Below, piece after piece: positions 36,723 through 40,379 of a DNA stretch of 64,000 nt. The stretch lies in the sequence record PQ471516.1; one strand, written 5' to 3'. A program made the position numbers and the translations under genes. The notes under the pieces were generated by a model. That model was given only the letters and a program-made list of their open reading frames with translations, ran no database searches and was not told where the DNA came from. Positions within the stretch are counted from its first letter, which is position 1, and each line of letters opens with the position of its first letter.

Positions 36723-37132
36723 ATCAATGCTACGAAATTGATGTAACAAAACCTGAAACAAGCACTTTGGAAGCGTTGGAAGACACATTAACAGTACTAC
36801 AATCTCCTGACAAAGAAACAACATTAGTAACCATTGAATACAAGGATTGTACTGTTGATGCTGGAAAACATCCAGAGTGGAAAGCACACCAATATTACTC
36901 AATATACATTCGCTATGAAAATTTCATAACTGATATGGCCTACGCAGAGGACTATCTGTTACTGGAGAATCATTTTGTATTCAAACAAAAAGAATACATG
37001 TATTGTACTCCTGAATATCTCGAAGAAGAAGAATTTCAGTATTCTTTGGTACAGGATGAAGTTGAGTACAACAAAGTATTAGTACTGTCAAAAATACATA
37101 AAATACTAAAGGATAAATATGTCACACAGTGA
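36719..37132 (+). CDS. EExFFQxS-motif family protein
   Basis: LEEEEFQYSLVQDE. Confidence 0.75.
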   Translation: MNQCYEIDVTKPETSTLEALEDTLTVLQSPDKETTLVTIEYKDCTVDAGKHPEWKAHQYYSIYIRYENFITDMAYAEDYLLLENHFVFKQKEYMYCTPEYLEEEEFQYSLVQDEVEYNKVLVLSKIHKILKDKYVTQ

Positions 37133-37289
37133 ATGGATGTACTTTATGAAACAAAAATATGCACCTCCTTTAAACGAAAGTATTAGCTACATTCACTGGA
37201 ATGTAATCAAAAACCCTTCGTTATATAAACGATATTTCGTAGAACCAAATACTGGTTGGTTTTTAATGGAACTTATTTTTAGGGATTAA
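37119..37289 (+). CDS. MTHEEW-family microprotein 1 (56 aa)
   Basis: MSHSEWMYFMKQKY...WFLMELIFRD. Confidence 0.75.
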   Translation: MSHSEWMYFMKQKYAPPLNESISYIHWNVIKNPSLYKRYFVEPNTGWFLMELIFRD

Positions 37290-37291
37290 TC

Positions 37292-37453
37292 ATGACACAT
37301 GAAATTTGGTTAAACTTAATGGCACACGATTTAAAACGAAGTATTAAACACTGGGATCTATATCTGATGATGACTATCAATTCACCTGTGTACTATAAAT
37401 CAGTACTAGATGCTTCGGCCCTTACTTTCATTGCAATTTCTATGAGTAGATAA
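37292..37453 (+). CDS. MTHEEW-family microprotein 2 (53 aa)
   Basis: MTHEIWLNLMAHDL... Confidence 0.75.
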   Translation: MTHEIWLNLMAHDLKRSIKHWDLYLMMTINSPVYYKSVLDASALTFIAISMSR

Positions 37454-37454
37454 T

Positions 37455-37619
37455 ATGTCATACGATGAATGGTTTGGTATGTGTCTCAAGAGATATTACG
37501 GAGACATATACTATTTTGAGAATTTCATTTATAATTGTTTACGCAATAAAGATGAATACTATTCTAATATAGTTGTAAATGACGATTTCAGTACTTACAT
37601 AGGTATATGTTTATCATGA
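37455..37619 (+). CDS. MTHEEW-family microprotein 3 (54 aa)
   Basis: MSYDEWFGMCLKRYY... Confidence 0.75.
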   Translation: MSYDEWFGMCLKRYYGDIYYFENFIYNCLRNKDEYYSNIVVNDDFSTYIGICLS

Positions 37620-37627
37620 GGTAACTA

Positions 37628-37813
37628 ATGACATATCTAGACTGGGTTGAACGCATGGATAGAATATTTGCCAATGACGTTTTTTATTTCAGAACAGGGG
37701 GTCTGGATAAAAGCATCAAAGACGATACTCTGTTTACCAGATGTATCATTGACTATCTGAATTGTTATGGTACAATGTATGGAATAGCCCGTACTACGGA
37801 TAAAGATGAATGA
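37628..37813 (+). CDS. MTHEEW-family microprotein 4 (61 aa)
   Basis: MTYLDWVERMDRIF... Confidence 0.75.
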   Translation: MTYLDWVERMDRIFANDVFYFRTGGLDKSIKDDTLFTRCIIDYLNCYGTMYGIARTTDKDE

Positions 37814-37983
37814 CACATAACGAATGGTTGGTACAAACTGAACACTCGGTTATTCCAGGTATGAAATTTTGGAATGAACAGTTGATGCACTTCGTAAGTA
37901 ATAAAGTGTATTATGATGCATTCTTTGGAAAACATGCTACAATTGAGGTTCATGTGTATTATGCTATTGCATTTGGTGATTAA
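37810..37983 (+). CDS. MTHEEW-family microprotein 5 (57 aa)
   Basis: MTHNEWLVQTEHSV... Confidence 0.75.
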   Translation: MTHNEWLVQTEHSVIPGMKFWNEQLMHFVSNKVYYDAFFGKHATIEVHVYYAIAFGD

Positions 37984-37986
37984 TTT

Positions 37987-38151
37987 ATGAAATATGACCA
38001 TTTAAAATACTATGCTGATAGAATAAATTATTATCCCTTTTATATAAGAAGCTTAGATGCATTAATATCAAAAAAAGTTGTATATAAACGATCTCAAGCT
38101 GATCTAACCAATATAGCATTCATTCTTGCAGTACTGTCTAAAATGGGATAA
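37987..38151 (+). CDS. MTHEEW-family microprotein 6 (54 aa, diverged)
   Basis: MKYDHLKYYADRI...FILAVLSKMG. Confidence 0.6.
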   Translation: MKYDHLKYYADRINYYPFYIRSLDALISKKVVYKRSQADLTNIAFILAVLSKMG

Positions 38152-38176
38152 TGTTAAATTAGGATGAATACAAAAT

Positions 38177-38368
38177 ATGACACATGAACAATGGATGAAA
38201 CAATTCAGTGAGGATTATAAAGCTGCCATATCCTTTTATGGAAAAAGATTCAACTATCTTTTTTGTAGTGAATATCATTATAGAAGTATAGTTCTTTATG
38301 AACAAATGGACGGTGAAAAACCTGCTGCTCATTGGGTTGTAATGTACATACTTGCTATGTCAAAATAA
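38177..38368 (+). CDS. MTHEEW-family microprotein 7 (63 aa)
   Basis: MTHEQWMKQFSEDY... Confidence 0.8.
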   Translation: MTHEQWMKQFSEDYKAAISFYGKRFNYLFCSEYHYRSIVLYEQMDGEKPAAHWVVMYILAMSK

Positions 38369-38393
38369 CACAAAAAATATTTTAATAAATATA

Positions 38394-38421
38394 TAGACAA
38401 CAACGTTATGTGTGATATAAT
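38394..38421 (+). promoter_or_regulatory. sigma70 promoter of the tRNA cluster
   Basis: TAGACA-16 nt-TATAAT with extended -10. Confidence 0.7.
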
Positions 38422-38479
38422 GTTTGTCCTGAAGGAGAAAAGCATGAACGATGAATTCGACGGCTTTTAAATAATACAT

Positions 38480-38564
38480 GCACTTGTGGTGGAATCGGTA
38501 TACACAACGGATTTAAAATCCGTCGCTTTATTGCTTGCGAGTTCAAGTCTCGCCAAGTGCACCA
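38480..38564 (+). tRNA. trnL: tRNA-Leu(UAA)
   Basis: GCACTTG/CAAGTGC acceptor, ACGGA-TTTAAAA-TCCGT, long variable arm, encoded CCA. Confidence 0.95.
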
Positions 38565-39048: not shown

Positions 39049-39080
39049 TACTGATAAATATTAATGAAAGGTATAGAGAA

Positions 39081-39278
39081 ATGACTAAATCCGAACTTCT
39101 GGCTTTATTAGAAAATTATCCAGATGATGCATGTATTGAAGTTGTGCATACTGCACAACATTTTGACATTGAAGATGTTGTACGATACAATGACAAAGGT
39201 GTGATGATTATGGAACTATGCATCGGTGCTTTGAAAACTGTACCAGAATCAACTAAACGAAACTCCCTAAAGGAATAA
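39081..39278 (+). CDS. hypothetical protein
   Basis: MTKSELLALLENYPDD... Confidence 0.75.
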   Translation: MTKSELLALLENYPDDACIEVVHTAQHFDIEDVVRYNDKGVMIMELCIGALKTVPESTKRNSLKE

Positions 39279-39284
39279 AATATT

Positions 39285-39518
39285 ATGGAAACTAATACAA
39301 TTTTAGATGTAGTAAACAGTGTTAATACTGGTGACTTTGTTCACATTCTTTTATCCAACATCCGTGTTAAGGGTATTGTTGAAAGTGTTGATTCTGAAGT
39401 TCTAACTATTGTTGAAGTTGATCCATACGACAATAATAAATCAGTTCGTCTGTGCATTGATGTTTCCAAAATTGTAGCACTCGGTACAGAAATTATTACT
39501 GAAGAAACTAATCTATAA
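39285..39518 (+). CDS. small beta-barrel (Sm/SH3-like pattern) protein
   Basis: VHILL..IRVKGIVESVDSEVLTI...LCIDVSKIVAL. Confidence 0.5.
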   Translation: METNTILDVVNSVNTGDFVHILLSNIRVKGIVESVDSEVLTIVEVDPYDNNKSVRLCIDVSKIVALGTEIITEETNL

Positions 39519-39529
39519 AACGACAATAA

Positions 39530-39605
39530 GCGGTAATCGTATAAAGGCTATTACCTCGGTTTTCCAAACCGATGATGTGGGTTCGATGTCCCACTTACCG
39601 CTCCA
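39530..39605 (+). tRNA. trnG: tRNA-Gly(UCC)
   Basis: GCGGTAA/TTACCGC, TCGGT-TTTCCAA-ACCGA, U73, CCA. Confidence 0.9.
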
Positions 39606-39660
39606 ACTTAAGAGGATTTAATATGTTTAAAGATGAACGTCCAGATTTGTAAAATAATCA

Positions 39661-39689
39661 TTGACTAAATAATCCAGTACTGATAAAAT
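39661..39689 (+). promoter_or_regulatory. sigma70 promoter with AGTACT in the spacer
   Basis: TTGACT-17 nt-TAAAAT. Confidence 0.75.
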
Positions 39690-39695
39690 AAATTT

Positions 39696-39785
39696 AGTGA
39701 AGTGGCAGAGTGGTTTAATGCAACGGTCTTGAAAATCGTCGAGGGTGAAAGTCCTCCGTGAGTTCGAATCTCACCTTCACTGCCA
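39696..39785 (+). tRNA. trnS: tRNA-Ser(UGA)
   Basis: AGTGAAG/CTTCACT, loop CTTGAAA, long variable arm, G73, CCA. Confidence 0.95.
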
Positions 39786-39789
39786 ATAT

Positions 39790-39871
39790 CCGGGTGTATC
39801 TCAACGGTCTTCTAAACCGTCGTTAATCGAGTAACTGGAGTATGCAGGTTCGAGTCCTGTCACCTGGGCCA
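39790..39871 (+). tRNA. atypical D-armless tRNA-Arg(UCU)-like RNA
   Basis: CCGGGTG/CACCTGG, ACGGT-CTTCTAA-ACCGT, T arm GCAGG-TTCGAGT-CCTGT, CCA; only 7 nt between acceptor and anticodon arm. Confidence 0.65.
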
Positions 39872-39892
39872 ATTTTAATTTAAGGTGTATCC

Positions 39893-40057
39893 ATGACGCA
39901 TGAAGAATGGATGAATGATATTAATTTTAGATATTCGGGTATCGGTAGTTGGCGAAAATATCATTGGGAAATTATATCAGACCCAGCAGAATACGATAAA
40001 CTTATAAACCATGAAGTATATCCGTGGTTCTTTATTGAAATAATGGTACGAATATGA
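39893..40057 (+). CDS. MTHEEW-family microprotein 8 (54 aa)
   Basis: MTHEEWMNDINFRYSGIGSW... Confidence 0.8.
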   Translation: MTHEEWMNDINFRYSGIGSWRKYHWEIISDPAEYDKLINHEVYPWFFIEIMVRI

Positions 40058-40218
40058 CGCATGAAGAATGGATGAATGATATTAATTTTAGATATTCGGG
40101 TTTCGGTAAATGGCTAAAGTATCATTGGGAATTTATTACTGATCCTCAAATGTACGATAAACTTATAAATGATCAAGCATATGAAATTTACTTATTTGAA
40201 ATACTGGTCAGAACATGA
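40054..40218 (+). CDS. MTHEEW-family microprotein 9 (54 aa)
   Basis: MTHEEWMNDINFRYSGFGKW...; ATGA coupled. Confidence 0.8.
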   Translation: MTHEEWMNDINFRYSGFGKWLKYHWEFITDPQMYDKLINDQAYEIYLFEILVRT

Positions 40219-40379
40219 CGCATGAAGAATGGATGAGAAAACAAAAGCTAACATGGAATCCTTATTGTTACCAGTTAGACCCAAGAATGTGGGATGTGAT
40301 ACGTATTAAATGTATGTACAAATCATTTCTTGGTGATATAATGGATGTTGAAGTACTGATGAATTTAGTACATCGATAA
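40215..40379 (+). CDS. MTHEEW-family microprotein 10 (54 aa)
   Basis: MTHEEWMRKQKLTW...; ATGA coupled. Confidence 0.8.
   Translation: MTHEEWMRKQKLTWNPYCYQLDPRMWDVIRIKCMYKSFLGDIMDVEVLMNLVHR

What the first reader, a model, noticed from the sequence alone, without database searches (positions are those of the whole stretch)
37119..40379. Two tandem arrays of ten ~55-aa MTHEEW microproteins interleaved with tRNA genes
Seen: seven head-to-tail ORFs (37119-38368) and three more (39893-40379), 53-63 aa each. They start M(T/S)(H/Y)x(E/D)W (one diverged), have aromatic-rich variable middles and hydrophobic C-terminal helices, and several are ATGA-coupled. Eight are missing from the ORF track. Inference: an accordion-type expanded family of small effectors, possibly inhibitors of anticodon nucleases or other defence enzymes given their position in the tRNA locus.
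Basis: partly seen in the sequence, partly recalled or inferred. Interest (0 to 1): 0.72.

Follow-up and report, generated by a model that had tools for sequence, protein, structure and literature searches.

The report
Small helical protein family in jumbo phage
Ten tiny back-to-back genes in the tRNA region of an E. coli jumbo phage are real; nine form a fast-diversifying family of about 7 kDa helical proteins found only in this phage genus, with unknown function and no demonstrated link to tRNAs.

Summary
The window is Escherichia phage Turkey5, a 351-kb Asteriusvirus. All ten ORFs exist exactly as described. Nine are statistically supported homologues. The tenth (m6, 37987-38151) has the same size and position, but its membership is unproven.

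- **Real genes:** dN/dS is 0.1-0.4 within lineages. Free-standing starts have Shine-Dalgarno sites, and three junctions are ATGA overlaps.
- **Protein:** the AlphaFold2 model is a soluble four-helix protein. It matches no Pfam, NCBIfam, PADLOC, PDB or BFVD entry.
- **Range:** among 1.84 billion representative proteins, only about 19 short clusters match, and every traced one lies in an Asteriusvirus genome or in a metagenomic contig carrying the same gene array.
- **Copy number:** it runs from 5 to at least 12 per phage. Whole-unit gains and losses, one copy split by a stop, and homogenised 5' ends all occur.
- **Setting:** the whole window is an early-type region, with 37 near-consensus sigma-70 promoters on the coding strand and none opposite. 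Other, larger tandem families of small proteins lie elsewhere in the genome, far from any tRNA gene.

My reading is an early, non-virion family of small binding proteins that evolves by birth and death. The anticodon-nuclease idea rests on neighbourhood alone. Side finding: an unannotated tRNA-Met gene split by a group I intron.

The parts
37119..37289 (+). m1, 56 aa (MSHSEW...). Family member nearest to the 'FGNG/WFIYELA' lineage of other Asteriusviruses. Its start overlaps the end of the upstream ORF.
   Evidence: Leave-out profile 52 bits. phrog_10970 E=3e-12. SD -5.4 kcal/mol.
37292..37453 (+). m2, 53 aa (MTHEIW...). Family member seen only in Turkey5/JNE01-type phages.
   Evidence: Leave-out profile 31 bits. 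No PHROG match.
37455..37619 (+). m3, 54 aa (MSYDEW...). Member of the lineage that starts MQPKTFDEW in other phages. Borderline but supported.
   Evidence: phrog_31562 E=1.7e-11. Leave-out profile 15 bits, 1 of 1000 shuffles as good. 1-nt gap after the m2 stop.
37628..37813 (+). m4, 61 aa (MTYLDW...). Family member with a relative in phage A4.
   Evidence: Leave-out profile 19-24 bits, 0 of 1000 shuffles. SD -7.0 kcal/mol. dN/dS 0.14 against JNE01.
37810..37983 (+). m5, 57 aa (MTHNEW...). Family member, ATGA-coupled to m4. Its orthologue in 121Q is broken by one stop.
   Evidence: Leave-out profile 25-28 bits.
37987..38151 (+). m6, 54 aa (MKYDHL...). A small ORF kept in five sequences, with the same size and slot as the family members. 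Homology to the family is unproven, and protein-level selection is not demonstrated.
   Evidence: 5 bits. (hhalign probability 1.6%, aligned in register). (dN/dS 0.92 from 4 synonymous and 14 non-synonymous differences). No tRNA or structured RNA here (fold z=-0.39). SD -5.8 kcal/mol.
38177..38368 (+). m7, 63 aa (MTHEQW...). Family member with a loop insertion before the last helix.
   Evidence: Leave-out profile 17-31 bits. dN/dS 0.30 against JNE01.
38394..38421 (+). Sigma-70-like promoter (11 of 12 matches, extended -10), between m7 and tRNA-Leu.
38480..38564 (+). tRNA-Leu(taa). Not annotated in the GenBank record.
   Evidence: ARAGORN. Rfam 60 bits.
38659..39518 (+). Three unrelated small ORFs between the arrays (38659-39048, 39081-39278, 39285-39518). 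Function unknown.
39530..39605 (+). tRNA-Gly(tcc). Not annotated in the GenBank record.
39661..39689 (+). Sigma-70-like promoter (10 of 12 matches, extended -10) directly upstream of tRNA-Ser(tga). The likely start of the transcript that carries m8-m10.
   Evidence: Co-transcription is inferred.
39696..39785 (+). tRNA-Ser(tga).
39790..39868 (+). Weak tRNA-like sequence. It occupies the slot that holds tRNA-Leu or tRNA-Arg in relatives.
   Evidence: Rfam 33 bits. Not called by ARAGORN. Relatives.
39893..40057 (+). m8, 54 aa (MTHEEW...). Family member.
   Evidence: phrog_10970 E=2.4e-27. AlphaFold2 four-helix model, pLDDT 76-78. Within-lineage dN/dS 0.18.
40054..40218 (+). m9, 54 aa. Paralogue of m8 (69% amino-acid identity), ATGA-coupled. 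Its first 48 nt are identical to those of m8.
40215..40379 (+). m10, 54 aa. Family member, ATGA-coupled to m9.
   Evidence: Median dN/dS 0.24.
40410..40775 (+). Conserved 121-aa ORF that follows the second array in every relative (phrog_34619, function unknown).
40807..40896 (+). tRNA-Ser(gct), preceded by a promoter-like site at 40772-40800 (11 of 12 matches).
36704..37132 (+). Upstream ORF (GenBank start at window 36719) whose end overlaps the m1 start. Array 1 continues a polycistronic block that begins after the terminator-like hairpin at 35743-35762.

Best explanation
The ORFs are protein-coding genes of a multigene family restricted to Asteriusvirus. Nine are certain members and m6 is a possible tenth. 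The products are soluble four-helix proteins of 6.3-7.7 kDa, probably made early in infection.

Inferred mechanism:
- Host sigma-70 RNA polymerase transcribes them from the co-oriented near-consensus promoters of this region. The transcripts are polycistronic and also carry the tRNAs.
- Ribosomes start at Shine-Dalgarno sites, or re-initiate at ATGA or 1-nt junctions.
- Each protein folds around a conserved aromatic and hydrophobic core.
- The near-invariant N-terminus M-T-H-E-E-W reads as a helix start signal: a hydrophobic staple (M1/W6) plus a capping box (T2...E5). It is not a catalytic or docking site.
- The polar surface positions vary freely, so each paralogue probably binds a different host macromolecule or variant of one. 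The role would be host take-over or counter-defence.

How the repertoire changes:
- Unequal crossing-over between the homogenised 5' ends adds or removes whole units.
- Divergence is fast after duplication and purifying selection follows.
- Copies are occasionally lost.

The position among tRNA genes reflects a shared plastic early region, not a shown functional link.
For: SHOWN
- Ten ORFs.
- Homology of nine.
- Purifying selection: median dN/dS is 0.24 over 74 pairs, 0.38 over 66 pairs and 0.24 over 14 pairs in the three best-sampled clusters, and 0.09-0.32 in the others. It is 0.18-0.26 within the m8 and m9 lineages, against 0.43 between them (0.57 in codons 17-54, 0.06 in codons 1-16).
- The N-terminal motif is kept through synonymous codon changes: ACA/ACG, CAT/CAC, GAA/GAG.
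- SD sites at free-standing starts and ATGA overlaps elsewhere.
- Four-helix models in two runs, pLDDT 76-78, with helix 1 starting at residue 3.
- No 19-residue window above 1.16 on the Kyte-Doolittle scale, so no membrane span.
- The core positions are conserved as hydrophobic while neighbouring positions show 10-15 residue types among 36 sequences.
- 37 promoter matches of at least 11 of 12 on the + strand and 0 on the - strand, against 1.9 expected. This is the highest density in the genome.
- Copy numbers in the 11 sequenced phages examined: Turkey5 10; JNE01 10; 121Q 8 plus one broken; G17 7; PBECO4, ELP22, JP4, WPEC3 and Turkey3 6 each; A4 5; CMSTMSU 4 intact plus two disrupted. A metagenomic contig has at least 12.
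- JP4 differs from G17 by exactly one 161-nt unit.
- The first 48 nt of m8 and m9 are 98.3% identical within a genome, against 93.2% between m8 orthologues.
- No further copy anywhere in the 351-kb genome.
- The family has about 19 short clusters among 1.84 billion representatives. It is found only in Escherichia and Salmonella Asteriusviruses among 50,697 phage records.
- The phAPEC6 orthologues gp094c-096c and gp099c-101c are not among its 62 virion proteins (PMC7247149).

FROM THE LITERATURE
- In the related phage CBB, RpoD-like promoters cluster in a region of short hypothetical ORFs that the authors read as early host-takeover genes (PMC5259590).

INFERRED
- Timing of expression, co-transcription with the tRNAs, the capping-box reading and the binding role.
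Against: - There is no expression, interaction or phenotype data for any member, and no structural or sequence relative of known function.
- The AlphaFold2 models are only moderately confident (pTM 0.51-0.56).
- The promoter evidence is consensus matching only.
- The pairwise dN/dS values are not phylogenetically independent, and the genes are short.
- Tolerated loss of m8 or m9 in some phages could mean redundancy rather than distinct targets.
- m6 shows dN/dS 0.92 on few changes and no detectable homology.
- Small proteins are easily missed by virion mass spectrometry, although one 4.7-kDa protein was detected there.
Confidence: 0.5

Rival explanations
1. The proteins inhibit anticodon nucleases or other tRNA-targeting defence enzymes, and they sit among the tRNA genes because the two work together.
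For: - In every relative examined, members lie next to tRNA genes.
- A promoter-like site directly upstream of tRNA-Ser(tga) could drive m8-m10.
- Varied paralogue sets would suit varied host nucleases.
Against: - All these loci are one syntenic region of one genus, so the co-location counts as a single observation.
- The region is a general field of early small ORFs.
- Larger tandem small-protein families lie far from any tRNA gene.
- No similarity to any defence or anti-defence entry was found.
- The annotated RNA ligase and RNA-repair genes lie elsewhere in the genome.
Confidence: 0.06
2. The paralogues are subunits of one hetero-oligomeric helical assembly, made in fixed ratios by translational coupling. 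They are not independent binders.
For: - ATGA and 1-nt junctions.
- Every phage keeps several lineages together: the MQPKTF/m3 type, the FGNG/m1 type, m8/m9 and m10.
- Small aromatic-rich helical proteins often pack together.
Against: - Copy number ranges from 5 to at least 12.
- Either m8 or m9 can be missing.
- Isoelectric points range from 4.2 to 9.6.
Confidence: 0.12
3. They are small DNA- or RNA-binding regulators, such as Cro-like helix-turn-helix proteins, that tune early transcription or tRNA processing.
For: - The size and all-helical prediction.
- The early-region setting.
Against: - Foldseek found no PDB match at E<=10 for either model, although helix-turn-helix folds are abundant there.
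- No Pfam helix-turn-helix match.
- Five of the ten are acidic (net -3 to -4), four are near neutral, and only m6 is clearly basic.
Confidence: 0.07
4. The copies are dispensable by-products of a recombination-prone region. They are duplicated and lost nearly neutrally and have no specific role.
For: - Frequent unit-length gains and losses.
- One copy broken by a stop in 121Q.
- m6 at dN/dS 0.92.
- A homing endonuclease and an intron nearby.
Against: - dN/dS is 0.1-0.4 in every well-sampled lineage.
- Reading frames stay intact across about 35 genomes.
- Core positions are conserved.
Confidence: 0.07
5. The ORFs are not coding. The repeats are DNA- or RNA-level elements, or mis-called tRNA sequence, as the GenBank tRNA-Leu feature over m6 suggests.
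For: - The GenBank record places a 119-nt 'tRNA-Leu' over m6.
- The 5' 48 nt of m8 and m9 are identical.
Against: - Neither ARAGORN nor Rfam finds a tRNA or other RNA family there.
- The RNA fold z-score is -0.39.
- Substitution patterns are frame-specific.
- Synonymous variation occurs under a fixed peptide motif.
Confidence: 0.02

Closest known systems
PHROGs families phrog_10970 and phrog_31562 (function unknown)
   Same: m1, m8, m9 and m10 match phrog_10970 over their full length (E from 3e-12 to 2.4e-27). m3 matches phrog_31562 (E=1.7e-11).
   Different: PHROGs treats these as two separate families. m2, m4, m5, m6 and m7 match neither. The profile tests here join nine ORFs into one family.
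Tandem paralogue arrays in jumbo-phage genomes: the 22 paralogous ORFs of phage CBB (PMC5259590) and the idea, cited in PMC7247149, that jumbo genomes grow by tandem duplication
   Same: Head-to-tail duplicated genes occur in a Rak2-like jumbo phage. The same genome holds further arrays of 18, 9 and 7 copies.
   Different: This family has not been described in the papers searched. It is unusually small (53-63 aa) and lies between tRNA genes.
Poxvirus 'genomic accordion' (K3L amplification; recalled from my own knowledge, not checked here)
   Same: Copy number changes by whole units through recombination between repeats.
   Different: Accordion copies are recent and near-identical. These copies are 15-30% identical and each lineage is held by purifying selection.
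The small-ORF and homing-endonuclease landscape of the tRNA regions of T4 and T5 (recalled from my own knowledge)
   Same: tRNA genes are interleaved with short ORFs of unknown function and with homing endonuclease genes in a variable region.
   Different: There is no sequence relationship. Here the short ORFs are paralogues of one family.
Small phage-encoded inhibitor proteins, such as anti-CRISPR and other anti-defence proteins or T4 early 'monkey-wrench' proteins (recalled from my own knowledge)
   Same: Shared traits are very small size, no enzymatic motif, an early-region setting, a narrow taxonomic range and rapid turnover.
   Different: No homology or fold match to any of them was found, and no target is known. 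The likeness is one of general logic only.

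Membership tests
MTHEEW family as defined here (profile of Asteriusvirus members) | Recognised by a profile built without the candidate's own lineage, and scoring above 1000 shuffles of itself | tested here: met
   m1, m2, m3 (borderline, 15 bits), m4, m5, m7, m8, m9 and m10.
MTHEEW family as defined here (profile of Asteriusvirus members) | The same test applied to m6 (37987-38151) | tested here: not met
   5 bits, with 34-48 of 1000 shuffles as good. hhalign probability 1.6%, E=0.032, although aligned in register.
phrog_10970 / phrog_31562 | Significant full-length HMM match | tested here: met
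   Met for m1, m8, m9 and m10 (phrog_10970) and for m3 (phrog_31562). No match for m2, m4, m5, m6 or m7.
Genomic accordion (recent adaptive amplification) | Copy-number differences between close relatives through whole-unit insertions or deletions | tested here: met
   G17 and JP4 differ by one 161-nt unit. PBECO4, A4, ELP22 and JP4 lack either m8 or m9.
Genomic accordion (recent adaptive amplification) | Copies near-identical, i.e. recently amplified | tested here: not met
   Identity to m1 is 15-30%. The closest pair, m8/m9, is 69% identical.
Known inhibitors of anticodon nucleases or other defence systems | Sequence or fold similarity to a described inhibitor or defence-related protein | tested here: not met
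   No hit in Pfam, NCBIfam, PADLOC, PDB sequences, or the PDB and BFVD folds. No dedicated anti-defence library was available.
Known inhibitors of anticodon nucleases or other defence systems | Physical or functional interaction with a tRNA-targeting nuclease | not testable with these tools
   Only co-location with tRNA genes is seen, in one syntenic region of one genus.
Early phage genes transcribed by host sigma-70 | Near-consensus, co-oriented sigma-70 promoters in the region | tested here: met
   37 on the + strand and 0 on the - strand, against 1.9 expected. Sites at 38394, 39163, 39661 and 40772 lie near the arrays. Actual timing of expression was not testable.
Small membrane proteins (holin-like, exclusion or type I toxin-like) | A hydrophobic segment long enough to span a membrane | tested here: not met
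   The highest 19-residue Kyte-Doolittle mean is 0.13-1.16. The C-terminal hydrophobic run is about 7-10 residues.
Helix-turn-helix DNA-binding proteins | Fold or profile match to a helix-turn-helix domain | tested here: not met
   No Pfam match. Foldseek against the PDB gave no match at E<=10 for two models. The models are of moderate confidence.
tRNA gene (GenBank feature over m6) | Cloverleaf detected by ARAGORN or by the Rfam tRNA model | tested here: not met
   Nothing at 38028-38146 down to E=0.1.

The most novel reading that the evidence does not exclude
The family is a diversified battery of small inhibitors. Each paralogue neutralises a different host defence or host factor variant, possibly including tRNA-targeting nucleases. 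The phage tunes the set by unit-wise recombination, so the repertoire tracks the range of host strains.
Probability: 0.15. Interest if true: 0.7.

Novelty: new member of a known kind. Interest (0 to 1): 0.35.

Why it matters
Jumbo phages carry hundreds of short genes of unknown function, and many annotation tracks skip ORFs under 60 aa. This work shows that one such set is a selected, evolving protein family with a probable new small fold. It gives the family a profile, a census and a clear evolutionary mode, so expression and structure studies can target it. It also shows that the appealing link to tRNA defence currently rests on neighbourhood alone. If the proteins prove to be inhibitors, the family would be a compact source of new binders of host proteins.

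Tried and rejected
**Searches that found nothing**
- Pfam, NCBIfam and PADLOC gave no hits.
- A PDB sequence profile search gave only noise, E>=0.63.
- Foldseek of two AlphaFold2 models gave nothing against the PDB, and only E>=2.8 against BFVD.
- Neighbouring ORFs have no Pfam domain. They match only PHROGs of unknown function, apart from one 'membrane protein' and the HNH endonuclease.
- Literature searches on Asteriusvirus, phAPEC6, 121Q, PBECO4, and paralogues or tRNA clusters found no description of the family.

**Motif scan of IMG/VR**
- A degenerate DNA pattern for MTHEEW gave 67 loci. Only the 121Q genome had several hits.
- The single hits are unrelated proteins that merely share the motif. 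Several are ORFs of about 300 aa starting MTHEEWL...GIGGSD, which from memory looks like YqaJ-type exonucleases.

**Readings I rejected**
- m6 as an RNA: no Rfam or ARAGORN hit, and an unremarkable fold energy.
- Membrane proteins.
- Leader-peptide or bacteriocin-type precursors: only six N-terminal residues are conserved, the whole chain is predicted to fold, and no modifying enzymes are nearby.
- A metal-binding N-terminus built around His3: His is replaced by Tyr, Leu, Arg or Lys in several members.

Full report
**Identity of the window**

The region 36700-40900 is 100% identical to Escherichia phage Turkey5 (PQ471516.1, 351,311 bp). It is 98% identical to phage vB_EcoM_JNE01. Partial matches at 81-91% identity go to 121Q, PBECO4, G17 and other members of the genus Asteriusvirus, which are Rak2-like jumbo myoviruses of E. 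coli and Salmonella. Window position equals record position minus 248,000.

**The observation**

The ORF listing returns all ten ORFs at exactly the coordinates given, all on the + strand, at 53-63 aa.

- Eight fit the quoted N-terminal pattern. m2 (MTHEIW) deviates at one position and m6 (MKYDHL) lacks the motif.
- Three junctions are ATGA overlaps (m4/m5, m8/m9, m9/m10). m2/m3 are 1 nt apart, and the m1 start overlaps the end of the upstream ORF.
- Free-standing starts have Shine-Dalgarno-like sequences of -4.0 to -7.0 kcal/mol. The overlapping or abutting starts are weak (-2.5 to -3.3), as expected for translational coupling. The mean over random positions is -2.1.
- ARAGORN and Rfam agree on tRNA-Leu(taa), Gly(tcc) and Ser(tga) between the arrays, and on Ser(gct) after them.
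- Eight of the ten ORFs are under 60 aa, which probably explains why an ORF track omitted them. GenBank annotates nine of the ten as hypothetical proteins.

**Is it one family?**

All-against-all BLASTP links m1, m2, m5, m7, m8, m9 and m10 clearly. m3 and m4 are linked weakly and m6 not at all.

I gathered relatives from eleven sequenced Asteriusvirus genomes and from metagenomic contigs. For each lineage I built a profile without it, then scored the left-out members against 1000 shuffles of themselves.

- Nine lineages are recovered, at 15-55 bits, with at most 1 of 1000 shuffles as good.
- m6 is not recovered: 5 bits, with about 4% of shuffles as good.
- Profile-profile comparison of the m6 lineage with the rest gives probability 1.6% and E=0.032, although the aligned stretch is in register.

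So nine are members. m6 is a same-sized ORF in the same slot whose homology is unproven.

**Are they genes?**

Nei-Gojobori dN/dS is below 1 in every lineage with enough changes.

| Comparison | dN/dS |
|---|---|
| 'FGNG' cluster, 74 pairs | median 0.24 |
| m8/m9 cluster, 66 pairs | median 0.38 |
| m10, 14 pairs | median 0.24 |
| MQPKTF lineage | 0.09-0.15 |
| Turkey5 against JNE01, where dS>0.05 | 0.14-0.32 |
| Within m8-type orthologues | 0.18 |
| Within m9-type orthologues | 0.26 |
| Between the m8 and m9 types | 0.43 |
| Between the types, codons 17-54 | 0.57 |
| Between the types, codons 1-16 | 0.06 |

The MTHEEW peptide is kept through synonymous codon differences (ACA/ACG, CAT/CAC, GAA/GAG), so the constraint acts on the protein.

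m6 is the exception. Against its most distant orthologue it has 4 synonymous and 14 non-synonymous differences, giving dN/dS 0.92, spread 6:4:8 over the three codon positions. It also has the lowest GC3 of the ten, at 0.16. Its frame is nevertheless open in five sequences. It has an SD site, and it is not a tRNA or a structured RNA.

**The protein**

- No member has a Pfam, NCBIfam or PADLOC match.
- m1, m8, m9 and m10 match phrog_10970 and m3 matches phrog_31562. Both PHROG families are of unknown function.
- Two AlphaFold2 runs, with 20-sequence and 28-sequence alignments, give the same four helices at about residues 3-13, 22-29, 31-39 and 44-51. Mean pLDDT is 76-78 and pTM 0.51-0.56.
- Foldseek finds nothing in the PDB at E<=10 and nothing meaningful in BFVD. 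A PDB sequence-profile search finds nothing either.
- There is no membrane-spanning segment. Isoelectric points run from 4.2 to 9.6, and Trp is 3.5-fold enriched.
- In a 36-sequence alignment, positions 6, 7, 14, 20, 27, 28, 34, 37, 38, 46-48 and 50-52 are 75-100% hydrophobic or aromatic, and positions 10 and 25 about 70%. The intervening positions carry 10-15 residue types. The core is conserved and the surface is free to vary.

Helix 1 starts at residue 3. That makes T2 (94% Thr, otherwise Ser) the N-cap and position 5 (89% charged residues, mostly Glu or Asp) the N3 residue. M1 and the invariant W6 then occupy N' and N4. This is the classic capping box plus hydrophobic staple. That reading comes from general knowledge of helix signals and is an inference. 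It explains why six N-terminal residues stay fixed while the rest falls to about 20% identity. The same peptide occurs at the N-termini of unrelated proteins in IMG/VR contigs, which fits a generic structural signal.

**Distribution and dynamics**

A profile search of 1.84 billion representative proteins gives 23 hits at E<=0.001. About 19 of them are 43-64 aa proteins of this family. The five long hits (571-919 aa) each match through several short stretches; I set them aside without inspecting them.

- tblastn against 50,697 phage records finds the family in 34-36 records. All are Escherichia or Salmonella phages, and those I fetched are Asteriusviruses.
- In IMG/VR only the 121Q genome carries it.
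- The whole Turkey5 genome, scanned piece by piece with two family profiles, holds no further copy. The best off-target score is under 12 bits.

| Phage or contig | Copies |
|---|---|
| Turkey5 | 10 |
| JNE01 | 10 |
| 121Q | 8 intact, plus an m5 orthologue broken by one in-frame stop and annotated as two short ORFs |
| G17 | 7 |
| PBECO4, ELP22, JP4, WPEC3, Turkey3 | 6 each |
| A4 | 5 |
| CMSTMSU (record flagged UNVERIFIED) | 4 intact, plus two disrupted members, possibly sequencing errors |
| Metagenomic contig L015 | at least 12 |

- G17 and JP4 differ by exactly one 161-nt unit (m8 absent). PBECO4 and A4 keep only the m8 type, and ELP22 and JP4 only the m9 type.
- m8 and m9 share 98-100% of their first 48 nt within a genome, against 71-76% afterwards. 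The m8 5' end is closer to the m9 of the same genome (98.3%) than to m8 orthologues (93.2%). This suggests gene conversion and provides the substrate for unequal crossing-over.
- m6 is 96-98% identical between Turkey5, 121Q and L015, while the flanking m5 and m7 are about 34% identical to their L015 counterparts. The arrays are therefore recombination mosaics.

This is birth-and-death evolution. The accordion label fits the unit-wise changes in copy number but not the age of the copies.

**Setting**

The window carries 37 sigma-70 promoter matches of at least 11 of 12 positions. All are on the + strand and none on the - strand, against 1.9 expected per strand. The density is 5.8 per 10 kb, the highest in the genome; the 200-248 kb replication and structural part has 1.0.

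- Sites near the arrays lie at 38394-38421, 39163-39191, 39661-39689 (just upstream of tRNA-Ser(tga), which precedes m8-m10) and 40772-40800.
- In the related phage CBB the same pattern was read as the early, host-takeover region (PMC5259590).
- The phAPEC6 orthologues are absent from its 62-protein virion proteome (PMC7247149).
- All neighbouring ORFs are of unknown function.
- Turkey5 has other tandem small-protein families far from any tRNA gene. There are 18 copies of 72-88 aa (plus one outlying 57-aa ORF) at record 20.7-26.1 kb, 9 copies of 59-64 aa at 346.7-349.7 kb and 7 copies of 143-195 aa at 30.6-39.7 kb.
- The annotated RNA ligase and RNA-repair genes, the classical answer to anticodon nucleases, lie at record 61.8-65.0 kb.

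The tRNA neighbourhood is therefore weak evidence for a function tied to tRNAs.

**Most likely mechanism**

The steps marked shown or inferred are listed under Best explanation. In short, these are early, non-virion, soluble four-helix proteins with a fixed core and a diversified surface. They are made from polycistronic early transcripts with translational coupling, and they probably act by binding host macromolecules.

- That the nine ORFs are genes of one family: about 0.95.
- That they are expressed early: about 0.7.
- That they act as binders in host take-over or counter-defence: about 0.4.
- That they target anticodon nucleases specifically: about 0.05.

**Novelty**

The kind of thing is known: tandem small-gene families in the early regions of jumbo phages. 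This particular family is undescribed in the literature searched, is split across two PHROGs, and has no fold relative. I rate it a new member of a known kind, of moderate interest.

**Procedural notes**

- Scripts printed stop-to-stop segments of relatives. For the broken copies in 121Q and CMSTMSU those segment bounds implicitly bracket the disruptions. I did not use them further and do not repeat them here.
- The anti-Shine-Dalgarno decamer used and the two promoter hexamers were typed from general knowledge.
- In one search I joined the two exons of an intron-containing tRNA gene as they stand to test a splice model. The intron had been predicted by Rfam and by ARAGORN.

Noticed in passing
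window 41050-41359 (intron 41088-41317); HNH gene 41374-42078: An unannotated tRNA-Met(CAT) gene is split by a 230-nt group I intron inserted directly after the anticodon. Rfam RF00028 scores it at 95 bits. The 5' exon ends in T and the intron ends in G. The exons, joined as they stand, are called tRNA-Met by ARAGORN and line up with the uninterrupted tRNA-Met of phages A4 and L012. A free-standing HNH homing endonuclease gene follows. ARAGORN with introns enabled calls it Arg(acg), with bounds 3 nt off. One literature search in the held library returned no paper that appeared to report a group I intron in a phage tRNA gene.
   Followed up: partly
window 38028-38146, 38480-38564, 39530-39605: The GenBank record places a 119-nt 'tRNA-Leu' over m6 that neither ARAGORN nor Rfam supports. 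The well-supported tRNA-Leu(taa) and tRNA-Gly(tcc) are not annotated.
   Followed up: yes
window 39790-39868: A weak tRNA-like match (33 bits, gathering score 29) lies right after tRNA-Ser(tga), in the slot where 121Q has tRNA-Leu and G17 has tRNA-Arg. It may be a decayed tRNA gene.
   Followed up: no
whole window, + strand: There are 37 near-consensus sigma-70 promoters (at least 11 of 12 matches, twelve of them perfect). All are co-oriented with the genes and none lies on the other strand, against 1.9 expected. This is the densest such region in the genome.
   Followed up: partly
L017 20749-26083 and 30295-39705; L018 34696-37704 (other parts of the Turkey5 record): Other tandem families of small proteins occur in the same genome: 18 copies of 72-88 aa (plus one outlying 57-aa ORF), 7 copies of 143-195 aa, 4 copies of 114-122 aa and 9 copies of 59-64 aa. 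None is detectable with the MTHEEW profiles.
   Followed up: no
window 25981-26409 / 27238-27693; 27694-28140 / 43770-44210; 44641-45099 / 45092-45511; 62242-62640 / 63025-63384: Four further paralogous gene pairs lie inside the window (BLASTP E<1e-4).
   Followed up: no
L015 286-4379 (ENA ERZ14189038 NODE_170); L091 357-1447: Metagenomic relatives carry still larger or different arrays of the family. L015 has at least 12 members, again ending m6 - m7 - tRNA-Leu(taa).
   Followed up: partly
window 37987-38151 against L002, L015 and L091: m6 is an island of near-identity between phages (dS about 0.03) whose flanking family genes are only about 34% identical. Against its most distant orthologue it shows dN/dS 0.92. 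This fits recent exchange of this one gene, or an unrecognised constraint on it.
   Followed up: partly
L087 11771-14953 and 19675-20088; L089 17618-18730 and 20885-21262: Turkey5 is annotated with an RNA ligase, an 'RNA repair' protein, two peptidyl-tRNA hydrolases and a CCA-adding enzyme. All lie far from the tRNA cluster.
   Followed up: no
L018 18035-33731, - strand: A block of twelve large minus-strand genes is annotated as RCC1, HERC1 or Kelch-like (two as hypothetical). The phAPEC6 paper's genome figure marks 'chromosome condensation domain' genes, and its virion proteome lists several 'DNA condensation proteins'; these may be the counterparts.
   Followed up: no
L028, L034, L036, L045, L054, L070, L075, L084 (IMG/VR contigs): The peptide MTHEEWL also begins unrelated ORFs of about 300 aa with a GIGGSD motif. 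From memory these look like YqaJ-type exonucleases. The hexapeptide is therefore not specific to this family.
   Followed up: no
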